From the sequence record MK327931.1: 64,000 bases of DNA. One strand, written 5' to 3'. The position numbers were made by a program, and so were the translations under genes. Position 1 is the first letter of the stretch. Every line of letters begins with the position of its first letter. Of the stretch, positions 11,962 through 24,992 are shown piece by piece. Below the pieces are notes generated by a model. It was not told the DNA's origin. It made no database searches and saw only the letters and a program-made list of their open reading frames with translations.

Positions 11962-12012
11962 GGTATAATCCCCAATATAAGCGGCCTGAATCGACCGCTA
12001 ACGATGTTTTGA

Positions 12013-12686: not shown

Positions 12687-12775
12687 TTTTGTATTCCTTA
12701 AATTAATATGTTGTCTTGATAAAATCTATTATGCCAGTACTATCAAACTATGTCAATAGTACTGTGATAATATTT

Positions 12776-12919: not shown

Positions 12920-13005
12920 TTTAGTTTCCTTGTAGTGGGGAGAACCATTTCTCCCCTTGATGTAATGTATTATACTTTATTCGATTTACTTTGCAAGTAC
13001 TTTTT

Positions 13006-13233
13006 TTAATTTAATTCATCCAGGCAAAGGATACGCTCAACGCCCAAATCAGTTAAACTAATCGACGGCACTTGATAGGTTTCAATGTATGCTACACTTG
13101 CCCACTGACCGAACTCATTAACGGCCCAGGTATTCATTGCATTTTGCAATTCCGCACCTTCCTTGTTGGTAATTACAGCAACAGTAGAAGAATTACCAGT
13201 AGTACCAGATACGCGAGTGATTACGATAGCCAT
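13006..13233 (-). CDS. hypothetical early protein (75 aa)
   Basis: AGGA SD; own promoter. Confidence 0.8.
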   Translation of the reverse strand: MAIVITRVSGTTGNSSTVAVITNKEGAELQNAMNTWAVNEFGQWASVAYIETYQVPSISLTDLGVERILCLDELN

Positions 13234-13302
13234 TTTTTAATTCCTATTCAGTAGTTGATGTATGTATTATGTCAGTACTTAAAACTATTGTCAAACTATT
13301 TT

Positions 13303-13455
13303 TTAAAGTTTATCAATGATTGATGCCGTTTCATTGATAGTCTTGCCGTGTTTTGCACACGCGATAACTGCTTTAAATTCCTTTGATGACCAATCTTTCT
13401 TGCTGCATACTGACATTACTTGTAAAGTAAAACAATCCAGTTCATAAGTATTCAT
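13303..13455 (-). CDS. small hypothetical protein (50 aa), paralogue of 9421-9564
   Basis: read by hand; GAGGA SD. Confidence 0.7.
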   Translation of the reverse strand: MNTYELDCFTLQVMSVCSKKDWSSKEFKAVIACAKHGKTINETASIIDKL

Positions 13456-13669
13456 CTTTAAATCCTCAGTTAGTTAAGGTGTCTCGCCTTGATGTAATTA
13501 ATTATACGCTAATCTCTTAATCGTGCAAGTACTTTTTATTACTTTTTGCAAAATACTTTAAACGCTCTCAATCGCATTCTAACGACCTTAACTCCACCAG
13601 CTAGGGCGATGTATCAGATAATCAGTTTAATGCGTTAGGCGGTGCTAGTGGACTGGAATACTATAGACA

Positions 13670-13711
13670 CAAAAAAGCCCACTGTTTAAGGTGGGCTAGT
13701 GATTCAGTACT
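13670..13711 (-). terminator. intrinsic terminator, identical to 14406-14447
   Basis: agcccac-cttaaaca-gtgggct plus T6 on minus strand; 42-bp exact duplicate. Confidence 0.85.
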
Positions 13712-13718
13712 TTAATTT

Positions 13719-14201
13719 TTATGCTTCAACTTTGCGATGAGCTTCGATCCATTCCTCGCGAGTCATACCGCTTTCTTTGATAGCGTCCAGTACTACCGCA
13801 ATGCAGTTACCGCGTACAGGAATCAAATGTTCTTCCCCGTTATCAAGTACTACCGCTACACGTTCCTGAATCCATTTTTTAGGCTTAGATTCCGGCTTAT
13901 CTTCACCATACTTAACCGCCAGGGCTTTATGTGCCATTTCCACAACCACTTCCAGATCCAATCCAGACACTGCCGCCTGAATACTTTCAATTGTTGCTTG
14001 TAGTTCTGCTTCACGGGCTTTTTTCTGTTCTTCCAGTTCTGCTACCTTTTTGGCTTGCAGTTCTTTCGCAGTACTGTACGCAATGTTAAAATTGTTGCGT
14101 ACCGCTTTCATGGTATCGCTATCCAGTTCAGCCAGGATTTCTGCCGCTACGTTAGTTTCATTTGCTACCAGTGCTTTGATGAATGATTTTACATTAGCCA
14201 T
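13719..14201 (-). CDS. H-NS/StpA-like protein (160 aa) with divergent DNA-binding loop
   Basis: coiled coil plus GLDLEVVV; C-terminal VLDNGEEHLIPVRGNCIAVVLDAIKESGMTREEWI aligns by eye to H-NS [35 protein letters not shown]. Confidence 0.6.
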   Translation of the reverse strand: MANVKSFIKALVANETNVAAEILAELDSDTMKAVRNNFNIAYSTAKELQAKKVAELEEQKKAREAELQATIESIQAAVSGLDLEVVVEMAHKALAVKYGEDKPESKPKKWIQERVAVVLDNGEEHLIPVRGNCIAVVLDAIKESGMTREEWIEAHRKVEA

Positions 14202-14263
14202 TTTATAAATCCTCAATTAAAGTTTAGTTTACGTTAGATAGTGTATCAAAGTTTTCTCGACGT

Positions 14264-14352
14264 GTCCAGTTTTTCGTTCGACTTACTGGCGGTCTACTTA
14301 GTGCTCCCCGTCTTGATGTAATACATTCTACGCTTTTCTGTGGTAATGTCAA
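14264..14352 (-). promoter_or_regulatory. sigma70 promoter and structured 5' leader (family B RNA motif) of the H-NS-like gene
   Basis: TTGACA-17-TAGAAT; ACATCAAGACGGGGA..TAAGTAG..CCAGT-AAGTCGAACGAAAA-ACTGG. Confidence 0.65.
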
Positions 14353-14405
14353 CTACTTTTTTAAAACTATTTTTAAAGTATCTCAGTACTACGATACTAC
14401 AAAAA

Positions 14406-14447
14406 CAAAAAAGCCCACTGTTTAAGGTGGGCTAGTGATTCAGTACT
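14406..14447 (-). terminator. intrinsic terminator, identical to 13670-13711
   Basis: exact 42-bp duplicate. Confidence 0.85.
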
Positions 14448-14450
14448 AGA

Positions 14451-14750
14451 TTATAAACAGTTAATTACTCCGGTGTGCGTTACTTTCTCAGTATCCATAA
14501 CCGTGACCGATCCACGCTTAGTACTGGCATCATAATAAATTGTGGTGCTACCGTTTTCGTCTTCTTCATGGAACGGGCCGTTTTTAAATGCTTCCGGCTG
14601 GATCTCTAAATCCTTTAATACAATCTCGCCAGTTCTTTCATCGGTCATTGCAACAGTGCACTGAATGAATTTTTCATTACTTACATCTAATGACGCATTA
14701 ACAGCGAAAGAGGAAACAGATAAAGCCAGGGCGATGATTGCAATTTTCAT
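14451..14750 (-). CDS. putative exported protein (99 aa)
   Basis: signal peptide MKIAIIALALSVSSFAVNA. Confidence 0.8.
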   Translation of the reverse strand: MKIAIIALALSVSSFAVNASLDVSNEKFIQCTVAMTDERTGEIVLKDLEIQPEAFKNGPFHEEDENGSTTIYYDASTKRGSVTVMDTEKVTHTGVINCL

Positions 14751-14834
14751 TTGATTATCCTTAGTTACCAGGGGGAACCGCTCCCCCTTGCTATGTAAAA
14801 TATTATACAGTACTAAAAACTAATTGCAAGTACT

Positions 14835-15071
14835 TTATGATTTTTTATAAAACATTTCGGCAGTGATATTTTTACCCGTTGGCTGTACTTTATCCAGAAT
14901 TTTTTGATGCCCTGGCCGTCCAAATGAATATGATCCGTAAACCGTAAACCAGTAGTTACCCTCAGTGTTTACATGTACAGCACAATAGGGAACGCCCCGC
15001 GATTCATCACTAGTAAAGTGTGCTACCGTTCCCGTTACATTCGAAGTCGTTGATTTGATTTGTTCAAGCAT
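14835..15071 (-). CDS. hypothetical early protein (78 aa)
   Basis: AAGGA SD; promoter cassette. Confidence 0.8.
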   Translation of the reverse strand: MLEQIKSTTSNVTGTVAHFTSDESRGVPYCAVHVNTEGNYWFTVYGSYSFGRPGHQKILDKVQPTGKNITAEMFYKKS

Positions 15072-15178
15072 TTTCTTATTCCTTAGTTACCAGGGGAACC
15101 GCTCCCCTATGCAAAACATTATACGCGTTTAAAAACTAATAGCAAGTATTTTAATAAAAAGTATTTGGAAAATAATTG

Positions 15179-15260
15179 TTGACAAGTGCATCCAGTACTG
15201 GCATAATTACTACATCAAGACGAAACAGTCACTAACCCACCGGGTGCATAGATCCGTCTA
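15179..15260 (+). ncRNA. two-hairpin RNA module, family A copy 5 (plus strand)
   Basis: TTGACA-17-CATAAT; GAC-GAAACA-GTC; CCCACCGGGTGCA-TAGA-TCCGTCT; no ORF downstream. Confidence 0.55.
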
Positions 15261-15313
15261 TTAAATGATTCAGTACTGAAAAAGTAACGGGGAGTTATTA
15301 TCTCCCCGCGTTG

Positions 15314-15535
15314 TTATTTTGTAAGGTATAAACAGAAGTCACCTTTATTTGCTACGCCGCCAGTGTAACGCGATGAATAGTTAGAAATATCTTGTACTTC
15401 TGCTATTACCAGTGTATCATCATTCATTTCGTCGCAGAAGCAAACGGCTGGATCTTTTACGCCGATATTGTCGGCATGTTCCCGCATAGATTTAACCAGT
15501 GCTTCCAGTTGAGAAAGAGTAGTGATATTAGCCAT
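15314..15535 (-). CDS. hypothetical early protein (73 aa)
   Basis: start moved to ATG after GAGGA. Confidence 0.8.
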   Translation of the reverse strand: MANITTLSQLEALVKSMREHADNIGVKDPAVCFCDEMNDDTLVIAEVQDISNYSSRYTGGVANKGDFCLYLTK

Positions 15536-15621
15536 TGTATTTTCCTCATTACCAGGGAGAACCATTTCTCCCCTCTATGTAAACTATTATACAGTACTGA
15601 AAACTAATTGCAAGTACTTTT

Positions 15622-15825
15622 TTAATTTAATTGCTTTAAAACATACTCAAAGACACCACGCACATCATTGATCATCGCCTGGCGGTTAGCAGGTAACGCA
15701 TCAGGATCGCCACTATCCCAGGCATTGATAAAACTCCCCAAATCATGATAGATTTTATTCTGTAAGCCGATTAACTGTAATTCTTTTTCTTCAAGCTCTT
15801 TGATGCGGTCGATTAAATCACTCAT
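15622..15825 (-). CDS. hypothetical early protein (67 aa)
   Basis: start moved to ATG after ACTGAGGATTATCTA, the same leader as the upstream gene. Confidence 0.75.
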   Translation of the reverse strand: MSDLIDRIKELEEKELQLIGLQNKIYHDLGSFINAWDSGDPDALPANRQAMINDVRGVFEYVLKQLN

Positions 15826-15842
15826 TAGATAATCCTCAGTAC

Positions 15843-16127
15843 TTAACTGTAAGATCCGCAACGGTCGCAGTAGTGCCCGTCCTCGTCATCGTCAACGAAT
15901 TGACCGACGAAATGATCTACTTTCGCTTTCAGGTTATTATAATCGTTTTCTACTTCATTTAAACGCTTCTGGTAGTATTCCAGTGCTTTAAGATATGCCG
16001 CATCAGCAGTTTTCTCCTGCATAGCTAAATTCATGCCACGCGTTTCATCGTACAGCCAAAAACCATCGGTGCACTGGCTAATAGATAATGACTTGCTTAG
16101 TACTGTATAGTTAATTACTTTACCCAT
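15843..16127 (-). CDS. hypothetical protein, coiled coil plus C-terminal CxxC (94 aa)
   Basis: GAGGA SD; YCDRCG end. Confidence 0.8.
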   Translation of the reverse strand: MGKVINYTVLSKSLSISQCTDGFWLYDETRGMNLAMQEKTADAAYLKALEYYQKRLNEVENDYNNLKAKVDHFVGQFVDDDEDGHYCDRCGSYS

Positions 16128-16219
16128 TAGATAATCCTCAGTAAAGGCGGGAACTATTCCCCGCCTCGATATAAAGTATTATACGTTAATCTAACTACAA
16201 TGCAAGTACTTTTTAAATT

Positions 16220-16486
16220 TTATAATCCTTTTACTGCATCAGGTGCGACTACTCCATCAATGTATTGAACATCGTTTTCAACTTCACGGGCGGCATCATT
16301 CAGCAGATCAAAATTAAATTCCATTTCTTCCAGATCATCGAAATCAGGCTCATAACCATTAATTGTTGAATAAGTCCAAGTACCTTTTTCATAAGTTACG
16401 ACACTTACATCAGGGAAGAAATCTTGCACATGATCCATCGCATCCCGAACCAATTGATGTGCAGTTGTGATATTTAAAGTTTTCAT
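16220..16486 (-). CDS. hypothetical acidic early protein (88 aa)
   Basis: promoter cassette; D/E rich. Confidence 0.8.
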   Translation of the reverse strand: MKTLNITTAHQLVRDAMDHVQDFFPDVSVVTYEKGTWTYSTINGYEPDFDDLEEMEFNFDLLNDAAREVENDVQYIDGVVAPDAVKGL

Positions 16487-16579
16487 TTTGTTGCCCTTTT
16501 AGTGTGAGCGGGGAACCACTCCCCGCCTCGATGTAAAGTATTATACGCTTTTAAACTTAGTTTGCAAGTACTTTTTAAA

Positions 16580-17191
16580 TTAATATGCGATTGATTCTAC
16601 TACGTCATCAATAACATTGAATTGATATTCGTTACCCTCAATCAGTGCCGTAATGTTTTCAGTAGTGAATTGATCCTCATATGCATTCTCTAAATCACGG
16701 TACAACTTGCGGGATAATTCACGAATAGTTTCAGTGAGTAGTTCCTCAAGCTCATTAACTAACGTTTCTTGTTTTGCGGTTAAATCAGTGTAAGCCGATT
16801 CAATGTACCCGCTTACAGTATTCTCATGCGAGTAGTGGGAGTGAGAACGCTTTACACTCATCGCCAAATCATCTTCATTCAGCAGGTGACGGATTGAGCG
16901 ATACTTAGTTAATGCTCTTACCTTGCGTAAAAACTTCACTGCGTCAACGTGGTCAGTACTGATTGATGCACCGTCACCCTGGGACCAAAAACCACTGAAT
17001 TGTATTTCAGCTTCATTAATGCCATATTCCGGTAGTACTGTTTCTTTATAGTATTCAATTTCACTTTCAGAAAAATAATTGTCGTTTGAGTTTTTTTCAC
17101 GTTCCCGAACCAGTTCGATAGCTGACGTTTTTTGTTCTGCGTTCAATTCAGAAAAATCCATAACGAAAGTAGTAGTAGTGATAGTTTTCAT
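16580..17191 (-). CDS. conserved phage hypothetical acidic protein (203 aa; FSGFWSQGDGA motif)
   Basis: ORF track; GAGG SD; own promoter. Confidence 0.85.
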   Translation of the reverse strand: MKTITTTTFVMDFSELNAEQKTSAIELVREREKNSNDNYFSESEIEYYKETVLPEYGINEAEIQFSGFWSQGDGASISTDHVDAVKFLRKVRALTKYRSIRHLLNEDDLAMSVKRSHSHYSHENTVSGYIESAYTDLTAKQETLVNELEELLTETIRELSRKLYRDLENAYEDQFTTENITALIEGNEYQFNVIDDVVESIAY

Positions 17192-17259
17192 TTTGTAACC
17201 CTCATTCAGTAGTTGATGTAAGTATTATACGCTTTTAAAAACATTTGTCAAACTATTTT

Positions 17260-17369
17260 ATCAGGGGAGTTTTTCGTGTGCCTTACTCCTGGGCTACTTA
17301 ACGGGAAGTTACTTATTTCGTTCCCCGTCCTGATGTAAAACATTATACGCCTTTAAACATAGTTTGCAA
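17260..17369 (-). ncRNA. promoter-driven 75-nt structured RNA, family B copy 2
   Basis: near-identical to 7272-7346; TAAC/GTTA stem with variable loop; GGAGT-AAGGCACACGAAAA-ACTCC. Confidence 0.6.
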
Positions 17370-17414
17370 GTACTTTTTAAAAATAGTTTTCAGTACTGAA
17401 TATTTAAAAAAGTA

Positions 17415-17488
17415 TTGACAGCATTATCAAGTACTGGCATAATATACCCCATGACAACAGCTAACCCACCGGGTGCACAATTGTAACT
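17415..17488 (+). ncRNA. two-hairpin RNA module, family A copy 6 (plus strand)
   Basis: TTGACA-17-CATAAT; CCCACCGGGTGCA-CAAT-TGTAACT. Confidence 0.55.
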
Positions 17489-17508
17489 ATACTAAACTAC
17501 TTTTTCTA

Positions 17509-17587
17509 TAGATACACTCCCGCACCCTATGGGCTACGGCTTATCTGCCAATGAATACATTATGCCAGTACTGACAAAATAAGTCAA
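17509..17587 (-). ncRNA. two-hairpin RNA module, family A copy 7, convergent with copy 6
   Basis: TTGACT-17-CATAAT; GGC-AGATAA-GCC; GCCCATAGGGTGCG-GGAG-TGTATCT. Confidence 0.6.
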
Positions 17588-17617
17588 TACCGGCAATTGT
17601 AAAGATTTGTAAACTGC

Positions 17618-17848
17618 TTATACTGCAATCGCGTCCAGGCTATAATAATAATAAGTGCCGTATTGGTGTACTTTATTACCTTTTATTTCAGTACTGAATG
17701 AATCCGAACGGTTTGCATATGATGTTAATTTAAAGTACTTTGATTTGCTGATACGTTGCCATACACCGCAGATCCGCTGTAAGTAAGTAGTTTTATTCGT
17801 GGTAGTATCTTTTACAGTTTTAACTTCAGTCATATACATATTAGTCAT
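17618..17848 (-). CDS. hypothetical early protein (76 aa)
   Basis: GGAG SD; promoter cassette. Confidence 0.8.
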   Translation of the reverse strand: MTNMYMTEVKTVKDTTTNKTTYLQRICGVWQRISKSKYFKLTSYANRSDSFSTEIKGNKVHQYGTYYYYSLDAIAV

Positions 17849-17935
17849 TTTTATTACTCCAGGTTATAGGCGGGAAGAGTTCCCGCTCTCGATGTAAAAC
17901 ATTATACGCCATTAAACATAGTTTGCAAGTACTTT

Positions 17936-18202
17936 TTATTCAAGTACTGCAATCTTTTTAGTACGGTACACGGTCACGCGGTTGCCCTTTCGGTCGAGCT
18001 TTATTTCTACCACTCGACGCGATACACTATCAGGACTTTTCAACGCCGCTAACCAGTACTGTAATGATCTGGCGGTACTACGCTTTATAATGGCCCAACG
18101 TTTACCACGTTCCGATTGTACGCCCATATCTTTAAACGTTGCCCCGTCCTGGCGTGCGGCGATCCGAGCTTGTTCACGCGTCGCAAAATACTTAATATTC
18201 AT
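17936..18202 (-). CDS. hypothetical early protein, paralogue of 5754-6149
   Basis: shared motifs; start at MNIKYF. Confidence 0.8.
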   Translation of the reverse strand: MNIKYFATREQARIAARQDGATFKDMGVQSERGKRWAIIKRSTARSLQYWLAALKSPDSVSRRVVEIKLDRKGNRVTVYRTKKIAVLE

Positions 18203-18287
18203 GCTGTTGCCCTTATCGTTGGTGTATGAATAAAACACTATTATAAAGTACTATCGCAAAAAATGATAGTACTTTAAATAAATTCTA

Positions 18288-18527
18288 TTACATTCCAACC
18301 ATTGCAGCACGGATCGCAGTAGTGCTATATTTGAATCCGTCCGGCGTTTTATCTTGTCCAGTCTGTTCTAAAAATAACATCATATGACGGGCCGCATCAT
18401 TACGATTAGTATTGGCGGCAATAAAGTCCTGGGCCAACCGGTATAATGATTCATCGTTATTAATCCAAAGGCTTACATTCCAATGAGTTTTGTTTTTGTG
18501 ACCTAAGAACATTTTTGATTTAGCCAT
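18288..18527 (-). CDS. conserved phage hypothetical protein (79 aa; THWNVSLWINND motif)
   Basis: start moved to ATG after GAGGA. Confidence 0.8.
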   Translation of the reverse strand: MAKSKMFLGHKNKTHWNVSLWINNDESLYRLAQDFIAANTNRNDAARHMMLFLEQTGQDKTPDGFKYSTTAIRAAMVGM

Positions 18528-18620
18528 TTTTTTAATCCTCTTATATAGTGGGGAACTATTCCCCACCTGATGTAAAACATTATACGCTTTTAAACATAGT
18601 TTGCAAGTACTTTATTAAAC

Positions 18621-18983
18621 TTATTCGTAAATTTTGCCACTGTCAGCCCATACCAGGAAACGAGGCATATTATCCCATGCATCTTGTTTTAAATTTAAAC
18701 CGTGTAATACTTCTGTACTTTCCATTCCTGGTACTGGTTTACTATACACCGCGAAATTTTCGCCCATATACTGATAAACCATCGTCAAATCACTGGCGAT
18801 CATCTTATGGATCATCGCATCAAGCATCACGGTAGCGGCGTATTGTTCACGCTTAAGCGGCAACATTGTAATAAGTTCCCGATAAGCTGAAATGTGAATT
18901 TTTACCGTTTCAGCCGGAAGACCTTTCATCTCTTCACGGAAGTTGACCAGGTTAGAAATAATTTTATTGATTTGGGTCGCCAT
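18621..18983 (-). CDS. hypothetical early protein (120 aa)
   Basis: start moved to MATQIN; first promoter cassette of the zone at 19007-19072. Confidence 0.75.
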   Translation of the reverse strand: MATQINKIISNLVNFREEMKGLPAETVKIHISAYRELITMLPLKREQYAATVMLDAMIHKMIASDLTMVYQYMGENFAVYSKPVPGMESTEVLHGLNLKQDAWDNMPRFLVWADSGKIYE

Positions 18984-19302
18984 CGTATTAATCTCTTTTA
19001 AAGTGTAGCGGGAAGTGTTCCCGCTCTCGATGTAAAACATTATACGCCTTTAAACATAGTTTGCAAGTACTTTCTACATGTACTTTTAAAATAGTTTTCT
19101 TTCTATATAGGGGAACTATCATTCAGTACTATTATTCAGTACTGAATCAACCAAATCACTACTACACCCCATAAAACGGCCTCAGACGCATTCTAACGCA
19201 TTAATACACCTAAGCTATACATTTGCACCATTCCAATCATTCCAGGGCTTTACGGGCCGTTTAAACGCGTTAAATTATTTTCAATTATTTTGTTTTTAGC
19301 TA

Positions 19303-19382
19303 TTGACTCAGTACAGAAAAAGCGTATAATTACTACATAGACGCGAGAAAGCGGAAACCCCAGAGGGTGCGGAATTACGCCC
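19303..19382 (+). ncRNA. two-hairpin RNA module, family A copy 8
   Basis: TTGACT-16-TATAAT; CGC-GAGAAA-GCG; CCCAGAGGGTGCG-GAAT-TACGCCC. Confidence 0.55.
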
Positions 19383-19402
19383 AAAATTCAAGATATAAAA
19401 AA

Positions 19403-19485
19403 AGGATACACTCCCGCACCCTAGCAGGTAAACGCACTTTCTCAGTACTGAAATATAGTACCATAGTCCGGCCCAGGATAGCAAG
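19403..19485 (-). ncRNA. degenerate family A copy 9, convergent with copy 8
   Basis: GGGTGCG-GGAG-TGTATCC hairpin; weak promoter upstream. Confidence 0.4.
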
Positions 19486-19518
19486 CAAATTAATTAAAAC
19501 TTTTTTGCTTCCAGGGTA

Positions 19519-19598
19519 TTGCTTTATTTTTTCAGTACTGTATAATAGTTCCATCAAGTCGAGAAAGACTCAAGCCCACCGGGTGCATAGTTACGCCC
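19519..19598 (+). ncRNA. two-hairpin RNA module, family A copy 10
   Basis: TTGCTT-16-TATAAT; GTC-GAGAAA-GAC; GCCCACCGGGTGCA-TAGT-TACGCCC. Confidence 0.55.
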
Positions 19599-19643
19599 AA
19601 AATTCAGTACTGAAAAAATTTTTAAAAATATCCGTCCAGGCCG

Positions 19644-19675
19644 TTGACATTGCCCCCAGTTTATAAGATAATGAT
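19644..19675 (+). promoter_or_regulatory. rightward sigma70 promoter with no downstream ORF
   Basis: TTGACA-17-GATAAT. Confidence 0.6.
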
Positions 19676-19769
19676 TCCAGATTCAGAAAAATCTAACTCC
19701 AGATACTGCGGGGAAACTATCCCCACGCGGTAGGGGAACTATTGGAAAAAACAAAATAAAATTTTGATT

Positions 19770-19897
19770 TAGCCGTCTATACTTCCAGACGTGTAACCAT
19801 CTAGCCGTTTAGCCGTCCAAACGTCTAGCCATCCAGAAATCTAGCCGTCTAGATGGATAGCCATCTTTACTTCCAGACTTCTGGAGGGCTAGACATA
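19770..19897. repeat. degenerate 8-bp-period tandem array (TAGCCRTC / CARACGTC units)
   Basis: TAGCCRT at 19770, 19802, 19810, 19826, 19842, 19858, all multiples of 8 apart. Confidence 0.85.
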
Positions 19898-20933
19898 TCT
19901 ACGCCCAAAATCCATCCAGGGTAACTACACCCAAAATCCGTCAGTACTATACCATAGATCTATCTTTTGAAAGGGAGTATTCAGTACTGCCATCATAGCC
20001 CTCACTATGTTACCCTAGGAGGATGAAGACCATCATGTAGTACTGAATACTGTTAGAGGGAATCCACCAGCACAAGCTGGTGGTATAATGCTTTAGATTA
20101 AAATCAGTACTGACACCATTCTGTTAATATCAGTACTGTTATTACGATTTTCATATGAGGTTCAAAAAGATGTACCACCACAGGAGGAACTATCTTTTCT
20201 GTACTGTCTCACGACAGGAGGTAGAGTAAATGAATTGTTCGCAGCAACTCATCACCCCTTGAAGCTATGTAGAACATTATACAGTACTGAATCATAATGT
20301 CAATAGCTTTCTTTCATTATTCAGTACTGATATTCTTGAGAACTACCCGACTACAAACATCATTATATCCCACAAATCATAAACGTCCCAACGTAAATTT
20401 CAACTTTCGAAGATCCAACTTTTATTTCATAGGTACTCCAAAATTTTTAGGATCGAGATTTAGGATGGAGTACTAACCAACTTTTTGCTGGAGCCTCAAG
20501 GGGTAATTGAATTTTACCCCGAAGGGTAAAAGGGTAATTGTAATTAAGGTGAAAGTAATAATTCAGTACTAATCATTGCGTGATTACTTTTGATTACATT
20601 TGATGTAATTTGCAAAATGGAAAAGGAGCTTGGAAACTACAAAGTACGGCAGACTTCCTCTGCCTACTTAGTGGCATATCAGTACTGAATCATTCACACA
20701 CATTTCCGTGCATTCTTGTCTATACTAATCAGTACTGAATCATATATAATCATTCTGTGATTCTACGGTGCTCATATAAATGTTTATATATGATTACTTA
20801 TGACTACCTATGATTACGGGGTTTAGCCTGGGGAGAATCCTAGTGATCGCATTTGTCCAGGCTGAATTTTAACATATGCAACATATGTTAAAGCCTGTAT
20901 AATGCTTCCACTACGGAGCTTCCCCTAGCTATA

Positions 20934-21125
20934 TTACTTCCTATATATAATCATTAAGATATAGTAGTACTGATTATACTGTACATTCTCTTTAATATTA
21001 TAAGGGTCTATAGCAATCTCGGTACATCTATTAAATGCATATCTATTAAATGCCAGTGGAATTATAGATCTAATCCATACTTGTTCATTTTCTTTTAGTT
21101 TACTTATATAGAAGTTTTTATACAT
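20934..21125 (-). CDS. HKEYY-family tandem paralogue (63 aa)
   Basis: MYKNFYI...YYILMIIYRK. Confidence 0.8.
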   Translation of the reverse strand: MYKNFYISKLKENEQVWIRSIIPLAFNRYAFNRCTEIAIDPYNIKENVQYNQYYYILMIIYRK

Positions 21126-21140
21126 AGTATTCTCTATTAA

Positions 21141-21323
21141 TTAATATGATAGTACTAGTGTTAGTACTGAGCACAATTGTTCTTTGTAGTTCTTAGGGTA
21201 TATAGAATCTTTTATGCACTCATTGAAGTGCCATAGGTATAATCTTGGGTCGCATTCTTTATATATTCTTACGGGGACGAATGTTAGTTTTCTTATATAG
21301 AATTCTTTATGTTCTTTATTCAT
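21141..21323 (-). CDS. HKEYY-family tandem paralogue (60 aa)
   Basis: HKEFYI. Confidence 0.8.
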   Translation of the reverse strand: MNKEHKEFYIRKLTFVPVRIYKECDPRLYLWHFNECIKDSIYPKNYKEQLCSVLTLVLSY

Positions 21324-21328
21324 ATTAG

Positions 21329-21514
21329 TTAGTGTCTGTATATAAGTAATAGTAAGAATACGTACTGCACATCTTCATCTTTAGTATTGAGTACTGTACG
21401 TATTGCGTCATGGAACAAGAATATAGTACTTGGGTCATGAAAATTTAAAGGGGTTCTGGGTACGGCATGTTTGTAGTTCCCTTTAACAAATTGTGTGTAG
21501 TATTCTCTATGCAT
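21329..21514 (-). CDS. HKEYY-family tandem paralogue (61 aa)
   Basis: MHREYY...LLLIYRH. Confidence 0.85.
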   Translation of the reverse strand: MHREYYTQFVKGNYKHAVPRTPLNFHDPSTIFLFHDAIRTVLNTKDEDVQYVFLLLLIYRH

Positions 21515-21515
21515 A

Positions 21516-21701
21516 TTAGTACCTATATATTAGGGCGAGAATGTAGTACAATTCATATGGAATGTAATTTGGGGTGATCGCACACTGTGTATGGTAAATG
21601 AATTGTTCGGTATTTTTCTTATCCTTGATATCTATTGGGATTAGTGGTATAAGCATTTGGGAGTTTAGATCCAGATGGCTTAAGTAGAATTCTTTATGCA
21701 T
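21516..21701 (-). CDS. HKEYY-family tandem paralogue (61 aa)
   Basis: MHKEFY...LALIYRY. Confidence 0.85.
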   Translation of the reverse strand: MHKEFYLSHLDLNSQMLIPLIPIDIKDKKNTEQFIYHTQCAITPNYIPYELYYILALIYRY

Positions 21702-21710
21702 ATTGTTCTC

Positions 21711-21899
21711 TTAGAATACGAAAGCTAGGTACAGGGTATGATACAGTACTCGATGGTAGCTGTCAAAATCTAGTATACATGCTTTAGTGCACATAGTAAA
21801 ATACACTTTATCATTTTGTGCATTGATACCGCGAGGTTTATCTAATAGATTAGTTCTGAGGTACATTGGGAAATATTTTGTGTAGTATTCTTTATGCAT
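21711..21899 (-). CDS. HKEYY-family tandem paralogue (62 aa)
   Basis: start moved to MHKEYY. Confidence 0.85.
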   Translation of the reverse strand: MHKEYYTKYFPMYLRTNLLDKPRGINAQNDKVYFTMCTKACILDFDSYHRVLYHTLYLAFVF

Positions 21900-21900
21900 G

Positions 21901-22083
21901 TTAGTACCTGAATATAAGTAGGATAGTGTTATATAGCTGGTCATAACTACTACTATTTTCTATACTTCGTTCTATGCAGTTATTGAATCCCAGTACTGCC
22001 AAATCGTTATCCAGAGGGACTTTATATCTGGCGTAGTGTACAAAAATGCTGGGGAGAAATTGTGTGTAGTATTCTTTGTGCAT
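21901..22083 (-). CDS. HKEYY-family tandem paralogue (60 aa)
   Basis: MHKEYY...LLIFRY. Confidence 0.85.
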   Translation of the reverse strand: MHKEYYTQFLPSIFVHYARYKVPLDNDLAVLGFNNCIERSIENSSSYDQLYNTILLIFRY

Positions 22084-22084
22084 A

Positions 22085-22276
22085 TTAGTACCTATATATT
22101 AGTAAAAGGATGTGATACAGTACTCGATTATAGTCTTCAATATATATCGAGGATTTAGTGCACTGAATGAAGTAGTCTTTTTCGTAGTTTTTTTCTATAC
22201 CCAATGGTTCTGTTGGTACAAGGTGTTGGAGATACATTGGGAGTTTCTCTATGTAGTATTCTTTGTGGTTATTCAT
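22085..22276 (-). CDS. HKEYY-family tandem paralogue (63 aa)
   Basis: MNNHKEYY...LLLIYRY. Confidence 0.85.
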   Translation of the reverse strand: MNNHKEYYIEKLPMYLQHLVPTEPLGIEKNYEKDYFIQCTKSSIYIEDYNRVLYHILLLIYRY

Positions 22277-22277
22277 A

Positions 22278-22460
22278 TTAGTACCTGAATGTTAGCATTA
22301 CTACGTAGTACAGCATATATGGATTATCATCGTATATGAGCGTGTACTTAGTACATTGTTGGAACATTATCTTTGCGTGATCTTTTATTCCTATTGGTTC
22401 TGTTGGTATATGGTGCTGGAGATGCATAGGGATTTTATCCCTGTAGTATTCTTTGTGCAT
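22278..22460 (-). CDS. HKEYY-family tandem paralogue (60 aa)
   Basis: MHKEYY...MLTFRY. Confidence 0.85.
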   Translation of the reverse strand: MHKEYYRDKIPMHLQHHIPTEPIGIKDHAKIMFQQCTKYTLIYDDNPYMLYYVVMLTFRY

Positions 22461-22470
22461 GTTGTTCTCT

Positions 22471-22653
22471 TTAGTACTTATATATTAGGAGTAAAATGTT
22501 ATAGTACTGGTTCATTGCGTCATCATTTTCTATAGCACGTTTTACGCTATTCATGTAGTTAGATCGAGCGGCACGAGTTATGAGAAGAACTTTGTATGCA
22601 GCAAAGTATTTTTGCTGCACGGGTAGTTTAGAGATATAGTATTCTTTATACAT
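22471..22653 (-). CDS. HKEYY-family tandem paralogue (60 aa)
   Basis: start moved to MYKEYY; ends LLLIYKY. Confidence 0.85.
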   Translation of the reverse strand: MYKEYYISKLPVQQKYFAAYKVLLITRAARSNYMNSVKRAIENDDAMNQYYNILLLIYKY

Positions 22654-23317
22654 AGTTTGTAATATACGTAATGAGGTGATGCATTTTCTTATTAGTACTG
22701 ATAATTTCCTGTACATGTTTTGTCAGATTGTACGCGTTTTTATAGAGTACTGGATTATCGATTACAGTACTGTACATGAATAGTTCTTCTTCCTGTAGTT
22801 CTTTGTGTTCTAGTTCTTTGAGGAAATCTACAATTGATTTAGTTTCTTCTGAACGTTGTGCTTGCCAGAAGTGCATATTCTCGTGTACTTTTTCTGCATC
22901 AGTAGAGTATATGCCACCCATTTGGAATTGTGCTGTATTGACATCGTGGGAGGTGTTACAATTCCCGAAGAAGTATGTATTCCCGAAGTATAGCATTAAA
23001 GTGCACGGGGTATTATCCAACTGCATATTGATGATGAAGGATGCGTTCTTTAGTACCTTTGTGCTCGTATTAGTACTCAATACTTTTAAATCAGTATTAT
23101 AGATATTCATATAATGAACAGCTATATTATTTTTCTTCATGTACAATTCAAGGTTCTTTGATACGTTAACTCCATTTGTACTGGATTTTTCCTTTTTATT
23201 TCGTTTCTTTAGTACATTCGGGTGATACGTATATGCAGATGTAACTGATTCTGCCTGAATACTATTGAGGTACTTAAAGTGCTTAAGGTATTGTTTGCTG
23301 TGTGCATTAAGTTTCAT
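22646..23317 (-). CDS. hypothetical protein (223 aa) interrupting the paralogue array
   Basis: ORF track; AAGGA SD. Confidence 0.8.
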   Translation of the reverse strand: MKLNAHSKQYLKHFKYLNSIQAESVTSAYTYHPNVLKKRNKKEKSSTNGVNVSKNLELYMKKNNIAVHYMNIYNTDLKVLSTNTSTKVLKNASFIINMQLDNTPCTLMLYFGNTYFFGNCNTSHDVNTAQFQMGGIYSTDAEKVHENMHFWQAQRSEETKSIVDFLKELEHKELQEEELFMYSTVIDNPVLYKNAYNLTKHVQEIISTNKKMHHLITYITNYV

Positions 23318-23327
23318 TTGGTTTCCT

Positions 23328-23507
23328 TTATATAGATGCCAGGGCGAGGATTTCCCTGTAGGGATTATCTTGTGTTAGTACAGCATAAATGCAGCTATTG
23401 AGATTAATATTTTTAGTACTTTTTGTTCCTAGTTTGTAGTACTTCACGAAGGTGTCGTACATGAAACGGTCTTTTATGGTTATACGTTCTCTATAGAATT
23501 GTTGCAT
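23328..23507 (-). CDS. HKEYY-related paralogue (59 aa, MQQFYRE...YREILALASI)
   Basis: read by hand; AAGGA SD. Confidence 0.75.
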   Translation of the reverse strand: MQQFYRERITIKDRFMYDTFVKYYKLGTKSTKNINLNSCIYAVLTQDNPYREILALASI

Positions 23508-23515
23508 AGTATTCC

Positions 23516-23698
23516 TTAAATAGCGATTAGTTTCATTACTTCTCTGTATGTGTACTTTTCGTTTTGTGCATCTCTTGTGACGACATATAGGAAGGTGTGT
23601 TTATCTTTTTTGTTCCCGCAATTGTAGAAAATATTGAACTTATTGAAGTTGAATCTTTCGGCGTGTTGTAGTTTAGTTAAATAGAATTCTATGTTCAT
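23516..23698 (-). CDS. HKEYY-related paralogue (60 aa)
   Basis: MNIEFYL...YTYREVMKLIAI. Confidence 0.8.
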   Translation of the reverse strand: MNIEFYLTKLQHAERFNFNKFNIFYNCGNKKDKHTFLYVVTRDAQNEKYTYREVMKLIAI

Positions 23699-23706
23699 TT
23701 TCTTCC

Positions 23707-23892
23707 TTACATTTCAATAAGTTTAAGTACTGCTCGGTACGTGTACTTAGTTGTTAGTGCTTCTTTAATAGAAATGCAGAAGTAATGTTGTTTGTCTCTT
23801 ATACTGCCGCGTTTGTAGTACCACACATGGGAGTTGTGACTGTACTTGTCTCTGTCGGATAGTTGTTGGTAGTAGTAGCTTATATGATTCAT
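23707..23892 (-). CDS. HKEYY-related paralogue (61 aa)
   Basis: ...YTYRAVLKLIEM. Confidence 0.8.
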   Translation of the reverse strand: MNHISYYYQQLSDRDKYSHNSHVWYYKRGSIRDKQHYFCISIKEALTTKYTYRAVLKLIEM

Positions 23893-24101
23893 TATAATGT
23901 AATTAGCCTTACTATATTAAAGTACTCGGTCCCTGGTGTACCTTGTAGTATATTACGCACGACATTTTTTTGGTGCTGGATGATTGCTGAAGGTGCGGTT
24001 CTTTTTAGTTTTTTTAAAGTACTGAATTCTTGTTTAAGTATGAACTGTACATCTTTAGGGAGAATATCTATGTAGTACTGATGAATGTTTGTAGTTTTCA
24101 T
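23892..24101 (-). CDS. HKEYY-related paralogue (69 aa)
   Basis: HQYYIDILP...YFNIVRLITL. Confidence 0.8.
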   Translation of the reverse strand: MKTTNIHQYYIDILPKDVQFILKQEFSTLKKLKRTAPSAIIQHQKNVVRNILQGTPGTEYFNIVRLITL

Positions 24102-24111
24102 ATAGCACCTT

Positions 24112-24306
24112 TTAGAACTTAAAGATGAGGTTCAGGATAGAGCGGTACTTAGTTTCAGGGAACTGATGTTCTATTGCATAACGTGTCGCCATCCTGAAAT
24201 CGTAATTGTAATATAGATTATCCTTTCTCATAGGTGGTGCTAAAGAGAATGATAGCTGGTCTTGCTTGTGTAGTTTACTACCATAGAAATCTTTATGATT
24301 ATTCAT
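24112..24306 (-). CDS. HKEYY-related paralogue (64 aa)
   Basis: MNNHKDFY...YRSILNLIFKF. Confidence 0.8.
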   Translation of the reverse strand: MNNHKDFYGSKLHKQDQLSFSLAPPMRKDNLYYNYDFRMATRYAIEHQFPETKYRSILNLIFKF

Positions 24307-24508
24307 AGAAGTAGATTAGTCCTATTAAACCTGAGTACATAATATTTTTGTTATTGCATTCGATTGCTTCTAGAGTACTACGTATACAATTATTAAAGCA
24401 ATCTCTACCGAAGTGAGTATTGGTACTTACAGGTGATACACTCCTTAGAAACAATTGTTCTTCGTTGCTAAGGTATTTGGTGTAGAATTCTTTATGTTCA
24501 GTATTCAT
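24299..24508 (-). CDS. HKEYY-related paralogue (69 aa)
   Basis: HKEFYT...LIGLIYFY. Confidence 0.8.
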   Translation of the reverse strand: MNTEHKEFYTKYLSNEEQLFLRSVSPVSTNTHFGRDCFNNCIRSTLEAIECNNKNIMYSGLIGLIYFYE

Positions 24509-24509
24509 A

Positions 24510-24713
24510 TTAGTACTCGATTAAAAGGGCAAGGATATAATAGTATTGCATACTTTCTGCCCCTTGTAAAGCATTTCTTATGATATTACTCCTGTACGAG
24601 TTCAGGAGTTTAGGACAACGTTTGTAGTGTATAAAAGTATTTTGTGTATACAGTAGGCTTTCTCGTAGACCTTTTGTTGGTAGTGCATCGATGTAGTACT
24701 GTTCAATGTTCAT
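24510..24713 (-). CDS. HKEYY-related paralogue (67 aa)
   Basis: EQYYIDALP...YYYILALLIEY. Confidence 0.8.
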   Translation of the reverse strand: MNIEQYYIDALPTKGLRESLLYTQNTFIHYKRCPKLLNSYRSNIIRNALQGAESMQYYYILALLIEY

Positions 24714-24937
24714 ATAGATAGCAGTACTAAGATTTTTGATAATTGTTTATTGCTATCCCCGCAGATGTTGCTGTGTAAAATACTCACAATGAGGGTATCA
24801 ATTGCATTGTTCATCATAAGGGTGCATCTTGGACTATTATAATTTTTTAGCTCAATTAGCCACGAACTATCCGAGAGAAATTCCCCGTACTCTAGTTCAT
24901 TTAGAGTATTGAGGTAGTACTTAAGAGTATTTGTCAT
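24710..24937 (-). CDS. HKEYY-related paralogue (75 aa), first gene of the operon
   Basis: GGAG SD; KYYL...ILVLLSI. Confidence 0.75.
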   Translation of the reverse strand: MTNTLKYYLNTLNELEYGEFLSDSSWLIELKNYNSPRCTLMMNNAIDTLIVSILHSNICGDSNKQLSKILVLLSI

Positions 24938-24959
24938 GTGTAGTTCTCCTTATATTCCT

Positions 24960-24992
24960 TCTATAGTACACCAGTACTGAAAGGATGTCAAG
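24960..24992 (-). promoter_or_regulatory. sigma70 promoter driving the HKEYY operon
   Basis: TTGACA-17-TACTAT with AGTACT in spacer. Confidence 0.75.

What the first reader, a model, noticed from the sequence alone, without database searches (positions are those of the whole stretch)
20934..24937. Tandem array of 17 miniproteins with fixed ends and hypervariable middles
Seen: 59-75 aa ORFs beginning (H)KE(Y/F)Y or similar and ending in a Y..(I/L)L.LI(Y/F)RY helix. They are translationally coupled, several through the repeated junction AGG TAC TAA T ATG (which nearly contains the AGTACT motif), and are driven by one sigma70 promoter at 24960. Central residues are barely conserved. Inference: a diversified library on one small helical scaffold, as expected of decoys or inhibitors for a variable family of host defence sensors.
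Basis: partly seen in the sequence, partly recalled or inferred. Interest (0 to 1): 0.72.

Follow-up and report, generated by a model that had tools for sequence, protein, structure and literature searches.

The report
Tandem mini-protein gene family in jumbo phage
A giant E. coli phage carries one early operon of 17 tiny genes, at least 16 of them diverged copies of a single four-helix protein of an apparently new fold found only in this phage genus; they are real and conserved genes, but what they do (probably bind host or rival factors early in infection) is still unknown.

Summary
The window is the left end of Escherichia phage vB_EcoM_G17 (Asteriusvirus, 370.8 kb). They are packed with gaps of -8 to +15 nt behind a sigma70-type promoter (24991-24963) that is conserved in all ten relatives examined.

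Eleven minis form one clear family (phrog_11711, unknown function). Five more join it by profile-profile comparison. The first gene, m01, is unproven.

AlphaFold gives a confident four-helix domain (pLDDT 90) with no neighbour in PDB or BFVD outside the family. The family occurs only in Asteriusvirus and only in this array, which ends 266 bp from the 20,668-bp terminal repeat.

Copy number is 15-21 in ten relatives, with 58 orthogroups. Similarity falls with distance along the array, as expected of tandem duplication. Orthologues are under purifying selection (dN/dS 0.39), weakest in the central loop.

"One scaffold, diversified" is supported. "Anti-defence decoys" is untested: there is no similarity to any known inhibitor and no expression data. 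The best reading is an early, cytoplasmic repertoire of host-directed binders. Interest is moderate.

The parts
24963..24991 (-). Sigma70-type promoter of the array: TTGACA (24991-24986), 17-nt spacer containing CAGTACTG, TACTAT (24968-24963)
   Evidence: The -35 hexamer, the upstream AAAACCC and the spacing are conserved in all 10 relatives; the -10 hexamer varies as TACTAT, TACAAT or TAGAAT. The architecture matches the roughly 40 near-consensus promoters of the window.
24946..24951 (-). AAGGAG ribosome-binding site of the first gene
   Evidence: conserved in all 10 relatives.
24710..24937 (-). m01, 75 aa: first gene, single copy in every relative; membership of the family unproven
   Evidence: hhalign against the core gives probability 1.6% and against the pair subfamily P 9e-4. 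The broad HMM gives E 0.004.
24510..24713 (-). m02, 67 aa, 'pair' subfamily (with m05)
   Evidence: m02 against m05 scores 1e-10. The pair profile against the core profile gives 93.5% probability, E 2e-7, over 58 columns.
24299..24508 (-). m03, 69 aa, core family
   Evidence: HMM E 1e-12; matches phrog_11711.
24112..24306 (-). m04, 64 aa, core family
   Evidence: HMM E 2e-8.
23892..24101 (-). m05, 69 aa, 'pair' subfamily; absent from phage 121Q
23707..23892 (-). m06, 61 aa, 'trio' subfamily
   Evidence: Trio members match each other at 1e-5 to 1e-10. The trio profile against the core gives 95.3% probability, E 2e-8, over 54 columns.
23516..23698 (-). m07, 60 aa, 'trio' subfamily
23328..23507 (-). 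m08, 59 aa, 'trio' subfamily
22646..23317 (-). 223-aa ORF embedded in the operon, not detectably related to the minis (phrog_29152, unknown function), kept at the same slot in the relatives whose annotation or gene calls were read
   Evidence: No Pfam or PDB match. The AlphaFold model is poor, pLDDT 43. dN/dS is 0.47.
22471..22653 (-). m09, 60 aa, core family
22278..22460 (-). m10, 60 aa, core family
   Evidence: the closest paralogue is its neighbour m11.
22085..22276 (-). m11, 63 aa, core family; the member that was modelled
   Evidence: AlphaFold pLDDT 90.1, pTM 0.75, helices at residues 3-9, 14-17, 30-45 and 49-62.
21901..22083 (-). m12, 60 aa, core family
21711..21899 (-). m13, 62 aa, core family. 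Its coding sequence contains a promoter-like site at 21766-21738 (11 of 12 matches) of unknown relevance
21516..21701 (-). m14, 61 aa, core family; not annotated in the GenBank record of G17
   Evidence: annotated in 121Q as gp262.
21329..21514 (-). m15, 61 aa, core family
21141..21323 (-). m16, 60 aa, core family; not annotated in the GenBank record of G17
   Evidence: annotated in 121Q as gp264.
20934..21125 (-). m17, 63 aa, core family; last gene of the operon
20825..20897 (-). Two conserved hairpins just 3' of the last stop codon (20897-20858 and 20863-20825, sharing the AGCCTG arm), with no U tract. Possibly a 3'-end or stability element of the operon transcript
   Evidence: (2 compensatory pairs).
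1..20668 (.). Context: the left direct terminal repeat of the genome. The array ends 266 bp inside the unique region and is transcribed toward the repeat
   Evidence: An identical 20,668-bp copy lies at the right end of the record. PhageTerm gives a 20,668-bp DTR for the near-identical phage Sharanji (PMC11895373).

Best explanation
This is a single early operon of an Asteriusvirus jumbo phage. It carries a genus-restricted tandem multigene family of roughly 60-aa soluble proteins.

A conserved host-type (sigma70) promoter is followed by 18 tightly packed ORFs. Sixteen of the 17 minis are paralogues of one compact four-helix domain. Its aromatic and hydrophobic core is conserved: an N-terminal HKEYY..L helix, a central F..C(T/I)..(I/L) helix and a C-terminal YY.IL.LIYRY helix. 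A loop of 15-20 residues and some helix surfaces differ from copy to copy.

The family grew by local tandem duplication. Near-identical junction DNA probably helps unequal recombination. Copies are gained, lost and replaced between relatives, yet each copy is kept by purifying selection.

Most likely mechanism: host RNA polymerase transcribes the operon within minutes of DNA entry, together with the small genes of the adjacent terminal repeat. Each mini then stays in the cytoplasm and binds a different partner through its variable loop and surface. The partners would be host proteins, most plausibly strain-variable defence or stress components, or else conserved takeover targets or rival-phage factors.

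Shown here: gene reality, common ancestry, shared fold, promoter conservation, confinement to a single locus, and turnover. Inferred: early timing, cytoplasmic binding, and the class of target.
For: - Real genes. Orthologue dN/dS is 0.39 pooled, against 1.05 for an antisense control ORF. The ORFs are kept in 36 phage records.
- One family. HMM and profile-profile links join 16 of the 17 minis.
- One fold. The AlphaFold model has pLDDT 90.1 and four helices.
- Conserved core, variable loop, seen both between paralogues and between orthologues.
- Operon structure. Gaps are -8 to +15 nt.
- Promoter. Conserved in 10 relatives. It belongs to a class of about 40 near-consensus sigma70 promoters (4.3 expected by chance), nearly all on the minus strand, about half in the terminal repeat and most of the rest among the genes at 43-64 kb, and none in the RCC1-like virion-gene block at 25-43 kb.
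- Analogy. In the related phage CBB, RpoD-like promoters mark a block of short hypothetical genes next to and inside the terminal repeat, which its authors regard as early host-takeover genes (PMC5259590).
- Position. The array ends 266 bp from the DTR.
- Soluble. No 19-residue hydrophobic window reaches 1.6.
- Not virion-associated. The minis are absent from the phAPEC6 virion proteome, which does list the neighbouring RCC1-like proteins and a 4.7-kDa protein (PMC7247149).
- Turnover. There are 15-21 copies and 58 orthogroups in 10 phages. Similarity decays with distance along the array (rho -0.31, p 0.0016). Junction DNA repeats of 32-75 nt are 61-94% identical.
- Confinement. All 20 copies in a whole relative genome lie in the one array.
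Against: - No expression data exist for any Asteriusvirus in the literature searched.
- No similarity to any characterised anti-defence, takeover or regulatory protein by sequence (Pfam, NCBIfam, PADLOC, PDB sequences) or by fold.
- No net positive selection. Even the loop only approaches neutrality (local pN about 0.10-0.11 against pS about 0.11-0.15).
- The proteins are not acidic DNA mimics: pI runs from 5 to 10, median 8.1.
- Many orthologues are nearly identical in phages isolated on different E. coli and Salmonella strains. That fits conserved targets as well as it fits variable ones.
- The array promoter matches the consensus less well (10 of 12) than most promoters of its class.
Confidence: 0.45

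Rival explanations
1. The minis serve the phage itself. They would be small adaptors, chaperones or regulators for the equally expanded RCC1-like virion proteins encoded divergently next door, or small transcription or DNA-binding factors that tune the phage's own programme.
For: - The array and the block of about 13 RCC1-like paralogues (25022-39077) diverge from one intergenic region of roughly 85-100 bp in every relative seen, including a metagenomic one.
- Both blocks are multi-copy.
- Many minis are mildly basic.
- An expansion of about 35 small zinc-ribbon proteins in Bacillus phage G has been proposed to act as transcription factors or DNA binders (PMC7824862).
Against: - The two blocks appear to differ in timing. 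The minis have a sigma70-type promoter of the early class. The RCC1 block has none of these promoters, and its products are virion proteins.
- RCC1-like genes occur in Yersinia, Erwinia and Cronobacter jumbo phages, whereas searches with the mini family found it only in E. coli and Salmonella Asteriusvirus records.
- There is no HTH or other DNA-binding fold match.
- The minis were not found in virions.
Confidence: 0.15
2. The minis are weapons or shields in phage-phage conflict, acting in superinfection exclusion or as inhibitors of co-infecting phages or satellites. They diversify because the rivals vary.
For: Early-type promoter, small size, turnover between close relatives and a large pan-repertoire. 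Nothing in the data separates this from host-directed binding.
Against: No membrane segment of the kind many exclusion proteins have; no homology to any known exclusion protein; no positive evidence.
Confidence: 0.12
3. The minis are packaged internal proteins injected with the DNA, like the polymorphic T4 internal proteins. The conserved N-terminus would act as a capsid-targeting signal.
For: A conserved N-terminal motif of about 10 residues on otherwise varied small proteins, arranged in a variable tandem locus, resembles the T-even IP loci (from general knowledge of T4 IPI-III and their capsid-targeting sequence; not tested against those sequences here).
Against: - There is no conserved (L/I)xE cleavage motif after the N-terminal segment (alignments).
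- The N-terminal helix is an integral part of the predicted domain.
- The promoter is of the early sigma70 type, not late.
- No array protein is among the 62 virion proteins of phAPEC6, although a 4.7-kDa protein was detected.
Confidence: 0.04
4. The array is largely dispensable ballast: a selfishly duplicating cassette, or decaying gene copies with no present function.
For: Copies are gained and lost freely between close relatives. Constraint is relaxed compared with typical core genes (0.39, against 0.10 for a nearby 120-aa gene). Some records contain truncated copies.
Against: dN/dS is well below 1 for nearly all orthogroups, while an overlapping antisense ORF gives 1.05. Reading frames are intact in all ten relatives. 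The promoter, ribosome-binding site and tight packing are conserved. The fold is confidently predicted.
Confidence: 0.05

Closest known systems
phrog_11711 (PHROGs v4, unknown function)
   Same: Eleven of the 17 minis match this profile, best E 5e-28. It is the existing database handle for the core of the family.
   Different: The PHROG carries no function and no description of the tandem array. It does not capture the pair and trio subfamilies or m01.
Host-takeover module of Bacillus phage SPO1: a cluster of 26 mostly small early genes in the terminal region (PMC6873191; Herelleviridae profile PMC7414437)
   Same: A block of very small genes at or next to a long terminal repeat, behind strong promoters read by the host sigma factor. 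Such blocks are thought to act on host machinery early in infection.
   Different: The SPO1 genes are not described as paralogues of one another (from general knowledge; not tested here), and they lie inside the redundancy. Here 16 genes share one scaffold, and the array lies just outside the repeat. There is no sequence or fold similarity.
Anti-CRISPR / anti-defence operons (acr-aca loci and 'anti-defence islands')
   Same: Clusters of small, fast-turning-over early proteins with no recognisable domains, varying between close relatives.
   Different: Those loci are generally described as collecting unrelated proteins, usually with an HTH regulator (Aca); this is from general knowledge. Here there is one diversified fold and no HTH gene, and no member is similar to a known inhibitor.
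Lineage-specific expansions of small proteins in jumbo phages, for example about 35 zinc-ribbon copies in Bacillus phage G (PMC7824862)
   Same: A single small domain amplified many times within one jumbo-phage lineage, function unknown.
   Different: A different fold with no metal-binding motif (at most one conserved Cys). Here the copies are strictly contiguous in one operon.
Terminal multigene families of large eukaryotic DNA viruses (African swine fever virus MGF100/110/360/505; poxvirus terminal host-range families). Resemblance from general knowledge, not tested
   Same: Tandem paralogue arrays next to the genome termini, with copy-number variation by gain and loss between isolates. In those viruses they are linked to host range and immune evasion.
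   Different: Unrelated viruses and proteins. The comparison is an analogy of genome architecture only.
T4-type internal proteins (IPI-III) with an N-terminal capsid-targeting sequence
   Same: Polymorphic tandem small genes with a fixed N-terminal segment. IPI is an injected anti-restriction protein.
   Different: No cleavage motif, an early-type promoter, and not found in virions of a relative.

Membership tests
phrog_11711 | Significant match to the PHROG profile HMM | tested here: met
   11 of 17 members match, best E 5e-28. The other six do not match directly, and five of them are linked by profile-profile comparison.
   16 of 17 are supported. m01 is not: hhalign gives probability 1.6% against the core and P 9e-4 against the pair subfamily; the broad HMM gives E 0.004.
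   Only m11, with a 71-sequence alignment of core members, was modelled (pLDDT 90.1). BFVD models of two other members match it, one closely (TM 0.80) and one only loosely (TM 0.52).
Anti-CRISPR / anti-defence operon | Homology or structural similarity to an experimentally validated inhibitor | tested here: not met
   No Pfam, NCBIfam, PHROG-annotated or PDB-sequence match. Foldseek against PDB finds nothing below E 3.
Anti-CRISPR / anti-defence operon | Associated HTH regulator (Aca) in the operon | tested here: not met
   The only non-mini gene is the 223-aa ORF, which has no Pfam hit. No mini shows an HTH fold match.
Anti-CRISPR / anti-defence operon | Inhibition of a defence system in vivo | not testable with these tools
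   Requires plating of wild-type and array-deleted phage on defence-carrying laboratory strains.
Early / host-takeover gene block (SPO1-like, CBB-like) | Promoters read by the host's primary sigma factor | tested here: met
   TTGACA-N17-TACTAT, conserved in 10 relatives; same class as about 40 near-consensus sites against 4.3 expected. This is sequence evidence only.
Early / host-takeover gene block (SPO1-like, CBB-like) | Transcription in the first minutes of infection | not testable with these tools
   No Asteriusvirus transcriptome was found.
Early / host-takeover gene block (SPO1-like, CBB-like) | Location in or next to the long terminal repeat | tested here: met
   The DTR is window 1-20668, and the array ends at 20934.
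T4-like internal proteins | N-terminal capsid-targeting sequence ending in a prohead-protease site (L/I-x-E) | tested here: not met
   The conserved N-terminus HKEYY..KL has no conserved Glu at the required spacing.
T4-like internal proteins | Presence in the virion | tested here: not met
   None of the array products is among the 62 virion proteins of the relative phAPEC6 (PMC7247149). This was not tested for G17 itself.
HTH or other small DNA-binding domains | Fold match to a DNA-binding domain | tested here: not met
   Best PDB hits have E >= 3.4 and TM <= 0.46 normalised to the query, and are not DNA-binding domains.

The most novel reading that the evidence does not exclude
The array is a phage-encoded 'repertoire' system. 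A previously undescribed four-helix scaffold would carry a hypervariable loop as its specificity determinant, with each copy neutralising a different, strain-variable E. coli or Salmonella immune sensor or effector. The near-identical gene junctions would act as recombination points that let whole cassettes be swapped between co-infecting relatives. On this reading the genus-wide pool (at least 58 orthogroups in ten genomes) functions as a shared library of counter-defence modules.
Probability: 0.2. Interest if true: 0.8.

Novelty: new variant of a known kind. Interest (0 to 1): 0.5.

Why it matters
Jumbo phages of the Rak2/121Q group are being characterised for therapy against E. coli and Salmonella, yet more than 80% of their genes have no known function. 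This array is a compact, cleanly delimited block of 17 such genes.

Three things make it tractable:
- One deletion removes the whole family.
- Each member is only about 60 aa, with a confident predicted structure and no known fold neighbour.
- Natural relatives provide dozens of variants.

If the minis are counter-defence or takeover binders, they would be a rare case in phages of a single scaffold diversified into a repertoire. In large eukaryotic DNA viruses that architecture is linked to host range. They would also be a source of new small inhibitors of bacterial proteins.

If they turn out to have no host-directed role, the result would still say how jumbo phages tolerate and maintain multigene families next to their terminal repeats.

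Tried and rejected
- 223-aa ORF as a mini with a large insert in the loop. Chimeras of its two ends score 9.7 bits against the family HMM, no better than other window proteins (9.6, 9.4). Its AlphaFold model is too poor to judge (pLDDT 43), so no fold search was run on it.
- T4-like packaged internal proteins. Rejected on the missing cleavage motif, the promoter type and the virion proteome of a relative.
- HTH or DNA-binding domain. No fold match.
- Family libraries. Pfam, NCBIfam and PADLOC gave only isolated single-member hits at E 0.004-0.1, consistent with chance.
- Rfam on 18900-25100. Nothing.
- Wider homologues. A profile search of 1.84 billion representative proteins found 31 genuine hits, all about 60 aa. 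Two long hits (P0081, P0088) are translated simple repeats and were discarded.
- The search for related loci with the family alignment failed because no stretch was conserved enough.
- Copy-number correlation between minis and RCC1-like genes. It could not be measured because tblastn merges adjacent copies into 'places'.
- Syntenic locus in Yersinia phage fHe-Yen9-04. It lies at a record end and was uninformative.
- My first fixed-spacing pattern for the promoter element found nothing because the spacing varies. A scoring scan replaced it.
- The junction's near-AGTACT as a signal. It is explained by the R-Y-stop codons, while the true AGTACTG element sits in the promoters.

Full report
**Identity of the window.** The region 20900-25000 is 100% identical to Escherichia phage vB_EcoM_G17 (MK327931.1; Asteriusvirus; 370,817 bp) at the same coordinates. 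It is 88-99% identical to more than 30 E. coli and Salmonella jumbo phages of the 121Q/PBECO4 group. The window is therefore the first 64 kb of the G17 record. The first 20,668 bases are repeated without a single difference at the right end of the record. This matches the 20,668-bp direct terminal repeat that PhageTerm found for the near-identical phage Sharanji (PMC11895373) and the roughly 21-kb repeats confirmed by restriction mapping in fEgEco12 (PMC13070987). The array ends at 20934, 266 bp inside the unique region, and is transcribed toward the repeat.

**Checking the observation.** All 17 ORFs of 59-75 aa are present on the minus strand at the stated coordinates. I number them m01 (24937-24710) to m17 (21125-20934) in transcription order. 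The GenBank record of G17 omits two of the minis (m14 at 21516-21701 and m16 at 21141-21323), which are annotated in 121Q. Gaps between the 18 ORFs run from -8 to +15 nt. AGGTACTAAT-ATG is the junction three times exactly and twice with one change. Upstream lies TTGACA-17 nt-TACTAT (24991-24963) and an AAGGAG ribosome-binding site.

**Are the minis one family?** Pairwise, m03, m04 and m09-m17 are clearly related. m02/m05 and m06/m07/m08 form separate groups, and m01 stands alone.
- An HMM of m09-m17 retrieves m03 and m04 at E 1e-12 and 2e-8 from all 425 window ORFs, with the remaining six at the top of the sub-threshold list.
- The same eleven match phrog_11711, a PHROG of unknown function. 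No mini has a Pfam, NCBIfam or meaningful PADLOC hit.
- I fetched the locus from nine relatives and iterated the search. The core profile then recruits the pair and trio types. All 175 hits lie on the array strand inside the arrays, so there is no sign of profile drift.
- Profile-profile comparison gives pair against core 93.5% probability (E 2e-7, 58 columns) and trio against core 95.3% (E 2e-8, 54 columns).
- m01 remains unproven: P 9e-4 against the pair type, probability 1.6% against the core, and E 0.004 with the broad HMM, against 0.19 for the best unrelated ORF.

Sixteen of the 17 are therefore demonstrably paralogues. Median pairwise identity among the 17 is 22%, range 9-50%.

**Fold.** AlphaFold2 on m11, using a 71-sequence alignment of core members, gives mean pLDDT 90.1 and pTM 0.75. 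The model has helices at residues 3-9, 14-17, 30-45 and 49-62 and a long loop at 18-29. Foldseek finds nothing in the PDB (best E 3.4, TM at most 0.46). In BFVD the only hits with E below 0.01 are two Asteriusvirus-type minis. A profile search of PDB sequences is empty. No 19-residue window is hydrophobic enough for a membrane segment. The pI ranges from 5.0 to 10.0, and Tyr makes up 11% of residues, twice the window background.

A 45-orthogroup alignment shows three conserved stretches: HKEYY..KL, a central F..C(T/I)..(I/L) and YY.IL.LIYRY. These correspond to helices 1, 3 and 4 and consist mostly of aromatic and aliphatic residues. The loop between helices 2 and 3 and the turn before helix 4 carry almost no conservation.

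**Distribution.**
- A word-indexed search of 5.8 billion proteins finds 66 clusters, all 41-98 aa. The hits that carry a name, or that sit on long contigs, are E. coli and Salmonella phage genomes of about 350 kb.
- An exhaustive HMM search of 1.84 billion representatives finds 33 hits. Thirty-one are genuine and about 60 aa (one is a 41-aa fragment). Two are translated simple repeats.
- tblastn finds the family in 36 phage records, all Escherichia or Salmonella phages and, where classified, Asteriusvirus.
- In the complete genome of the relative ECO103 4-12-1, all 20 members lie in one array at 322,542-327,333. The best hit elsewhere has E 0.09.
- No member occurs elsewhere in the window, in G17 64-114 kb, or just upstream of the right repeat.
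- A metagenomic relative has the same layout: RCC1-like genes, then divergently the minis, a 222-aa ORF, more minis, a gene-poor gap, and small genes.

**Evolution.** Copy number in ten phages is 15-21. The order is conserved: m01 type, pair type, one or two core members, optionally another pair type, three to six trio types (two in JNE01 and Turkey5, where a core member sits between them), the roughly 223-aa ORF, then nine to eleven core members (ORF position).
- At 65% identity the 175 proteins fall into 58 orthogroups. JNE01 and Turkey5 share none with the other eight phages.
- Within G17, similarity falls with distance along the array (Spearman -0.31, permutation p 0.0016), and the nearest paralogue is usually one to three genes away.
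- DNA repeats of 32-75 nt with 61-94% identity sit at the gene junctions with a period of about 185-195 nt. These are plausible substrates for unequal recombination. That last step is inference.
- Nei-Gojobori dN/dS over orthologous pairs is 0.39 pooled. The embedded 223-aa ORF gives 0.47, a neighbouring 120-aa gene 0.10, and an antisense ORF used as a negative control 1.05. These pooled pairwise figures are not phylogenetically independent.
- Split by the model's secondary structure, helices give 0.36 and loops 0.48. Around residues 23-26, pN (0.10-0.11) approaches pS (0.11-0.15). Orthologue alignments show the differences concentrated in that loop.

The genes are therefore real and maintained. 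The loop is the least constrained part, and there is no overall signal of positive selection.

**Transcription context.** The promoter, including the -35 hexamer, an upstream AAAACCC, the spacing and the ribosome-binding site, is conserved in all ten relatives. The -10 hexamer drifts toward consensus in the two most divergent ones.
- A scan of the window finds 40 sites matching at least 11 of 12 positions of TTGACA-N16-18-TATAAT, against 4.3 in shuffles.
- Nearly all are on the minus strand. About half lie within the terminal repeat, most of the rest lie at 43-64 kb, and none lies in the RCC1-like block at 25-43 kb.
- Most share the form TTGACA-N8-(T/C)AGTACTG-TATAAT. This explains the 64 copies of CAGTACTG, against 0.9 expected.
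- The array's promoter has the same build, but with a weaker -10 (10 of 12).
- In the related phage CBB, RpoD-like promoters likewise mark a region of short hypothetical genes beside and inside the terminal repeat, which its authors interpret as early host-takeover genes (PMC5259590).
- No transcriptome of an Asteriusvirus was found, so early timing is inferred, not shown.
- In the phAPEC6 virion proteome, the RCC1-like neighbours gp549 and gp551 are present. No array protein is, although a 4.7-kDa protein was detected (PMC7247149).
- Immediately 3' of m17 lie two conserved hairpins (20897-20825) with two compensatory pairs and no U tract. They may define or stabilise the 3' end of the transcript.

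**The 223-aa ORF.** It belongs to phrog_29152 (unknown function) and has homologues only in this genus. It has no Pfam or PDB-sequence match. Its AlphaFold model is unusable (pLDDT 43). The idea that it is a mini with an inserted domain is not supported.

**Interpretation.** The evidence establishes a genus-restricted, tandemly duplicated family on one new-looking four-helix scaffold. It sits in one tightly packed operon behind a conserved host-type promoter, at the edge of the terminal repeat, with birth-and-death turnover and purifying selection on each copy. I read this as an early, cytoplasmic repertoire of small binders directed at host factors: counter-defence first, then takeover, then rival phages. 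My confidence is about 0.45.

Counter-defence specifically is not supported by any homology, by selection pattern or by experiment. Alternatives with real weight are a phage-internal role linked to the adjacent RCC1-like virion-protein expansion (0.15) and phage-phage conflict (0.12). Packaged internal proteins (0.04) and functionless ballast (0.05) are disfavoured by the data above.

**Comparison with known systems.** The closest database entity is phrog_11711, of which 11 members are bona fide members. In architecture the array resembles the SPO1 host-takeover module and the early block of CBB (small early genes at a long terminal repeat), anti-defence operons (small, fast-turning-over early proteins), and single-domain expansions in other jumbo phages (phage G zinc ribbons, PMC7824862). 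As an analogy only, it also resembles the terminal multigene families of large eukaryotic DNA viruses. It differs from the phage examples in combining one diversified scaffold, strict contiguity in one operon, and a fold with no known neighbour. I found no paper describing the array. I rate it a new variant of a known kind, of moderate interest (0.5).

Noticed in passing
window 1-64000, densest at 1-20700 and 43000-64000, minus strand: A phage-specific promoter class, TTGACA-N8-(T/C)AGTACTG-TATAAT. There are 40 sites matching at least 11 of 12 sigma70 consensus positions, against 4.3 expected, almost all on the minus strand. This accounts for the 64 copies of the palindrome CAGTACTG, against 0.9 expected. 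None lies in the RCC1-like block at 25-43 kb.
   Followed up: partly
window 1-20668: The left direct terminal repeat of G17. An identical 20,668-bp copy ends the GenBank record, and the repeat is filled with small minus-strand genes behind the promoters above.
   Followed up: yes
window 19040-20933: A stretch of about 1.9 kb with almost no annotated genes, spanning the end of the terminal repeat. It is 87-96% identical in nearly all Asteriusvirus genomes, although the neighbouring array is far more variable. It holds strong promoter-like sites on both strands, 11 CAGTACTG copies and one annotated terminator. Rfam finds nothing.
   Followed up: partly
window about 19323-19374: A 52-nt piece, overlapping a plus-strand promoter-like site at 19303-19330, is 94-96% identical in phages outside Asteriusvirus (Salmonella phages SE_PL and Munch, Erwinia phage Kaldavass). 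It may be a conserved small RNA or a regulatory site.
   Followed up: no
window 20825-20897, minus strand: Two overlapping conserved hairpins directly after the last gene of the array. Two base pairs are kept by compensatory changes across relatives, and there is no U tract.
   Followed up: partly
window 25022-39077, plus strand: A divergently oriented block of about 13 paralogous RCC1-like (beta-propeller) genes of about 380-440 aa. Two orthologues are virion proteins in phAPEC6. Relatives annotate them variously as 'DNA condensation protein' or 'HERC1'.
   Followed up: partly
window 21141-21323 and 21516-21701, minus strand: Two array genes are missing from the G17 GenBank annotation but are annotated in 121Q as gp264 and gp262. 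Several other records annotate only 4-9 of the array genes.
   Followed up: yes
window 14000-19040: A megablast of 14000-20930 hits 159 phage records, including genera other than Asteriusvirus (Phapecoctavirus, Justusliebigvirus, records labelled Campylobacter phage), and 10 places within G17. The wider hits must come from 14000-19040, because 19040-20933 alone hits only 42 records. The shared element was not identified.
   Followed up: no
window 43913, 45327, 46609 (and a variant at 57223), minus strand: Identical 30-mers TTGACTTCGGTCAGCCCTTTTTGCTATAAT. Each is a promoter-like site whose -35 region overlaps a small GAC-TTCG-GTC hairpin, repeated in front of several genes.
   Followed up: no
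L011 32-1053 (G17 349031-350052), minus strand: Five overlapping ORFs of about 65-71 aa lie just upstream of the right terminal repeat. They look like another small-gene run but do not match the mini family.
   Followed up: partly
window 21738-21766, minus strand (inside m13): An 11-of-12 sigma70-like site with the AGTACTG element lies within coding sequence, at the codons for R-V-L-Y-H. It could be an internal promoter for m14-m17 or a by-product of the conserved C-terminal helix codons.
   Followed up: no
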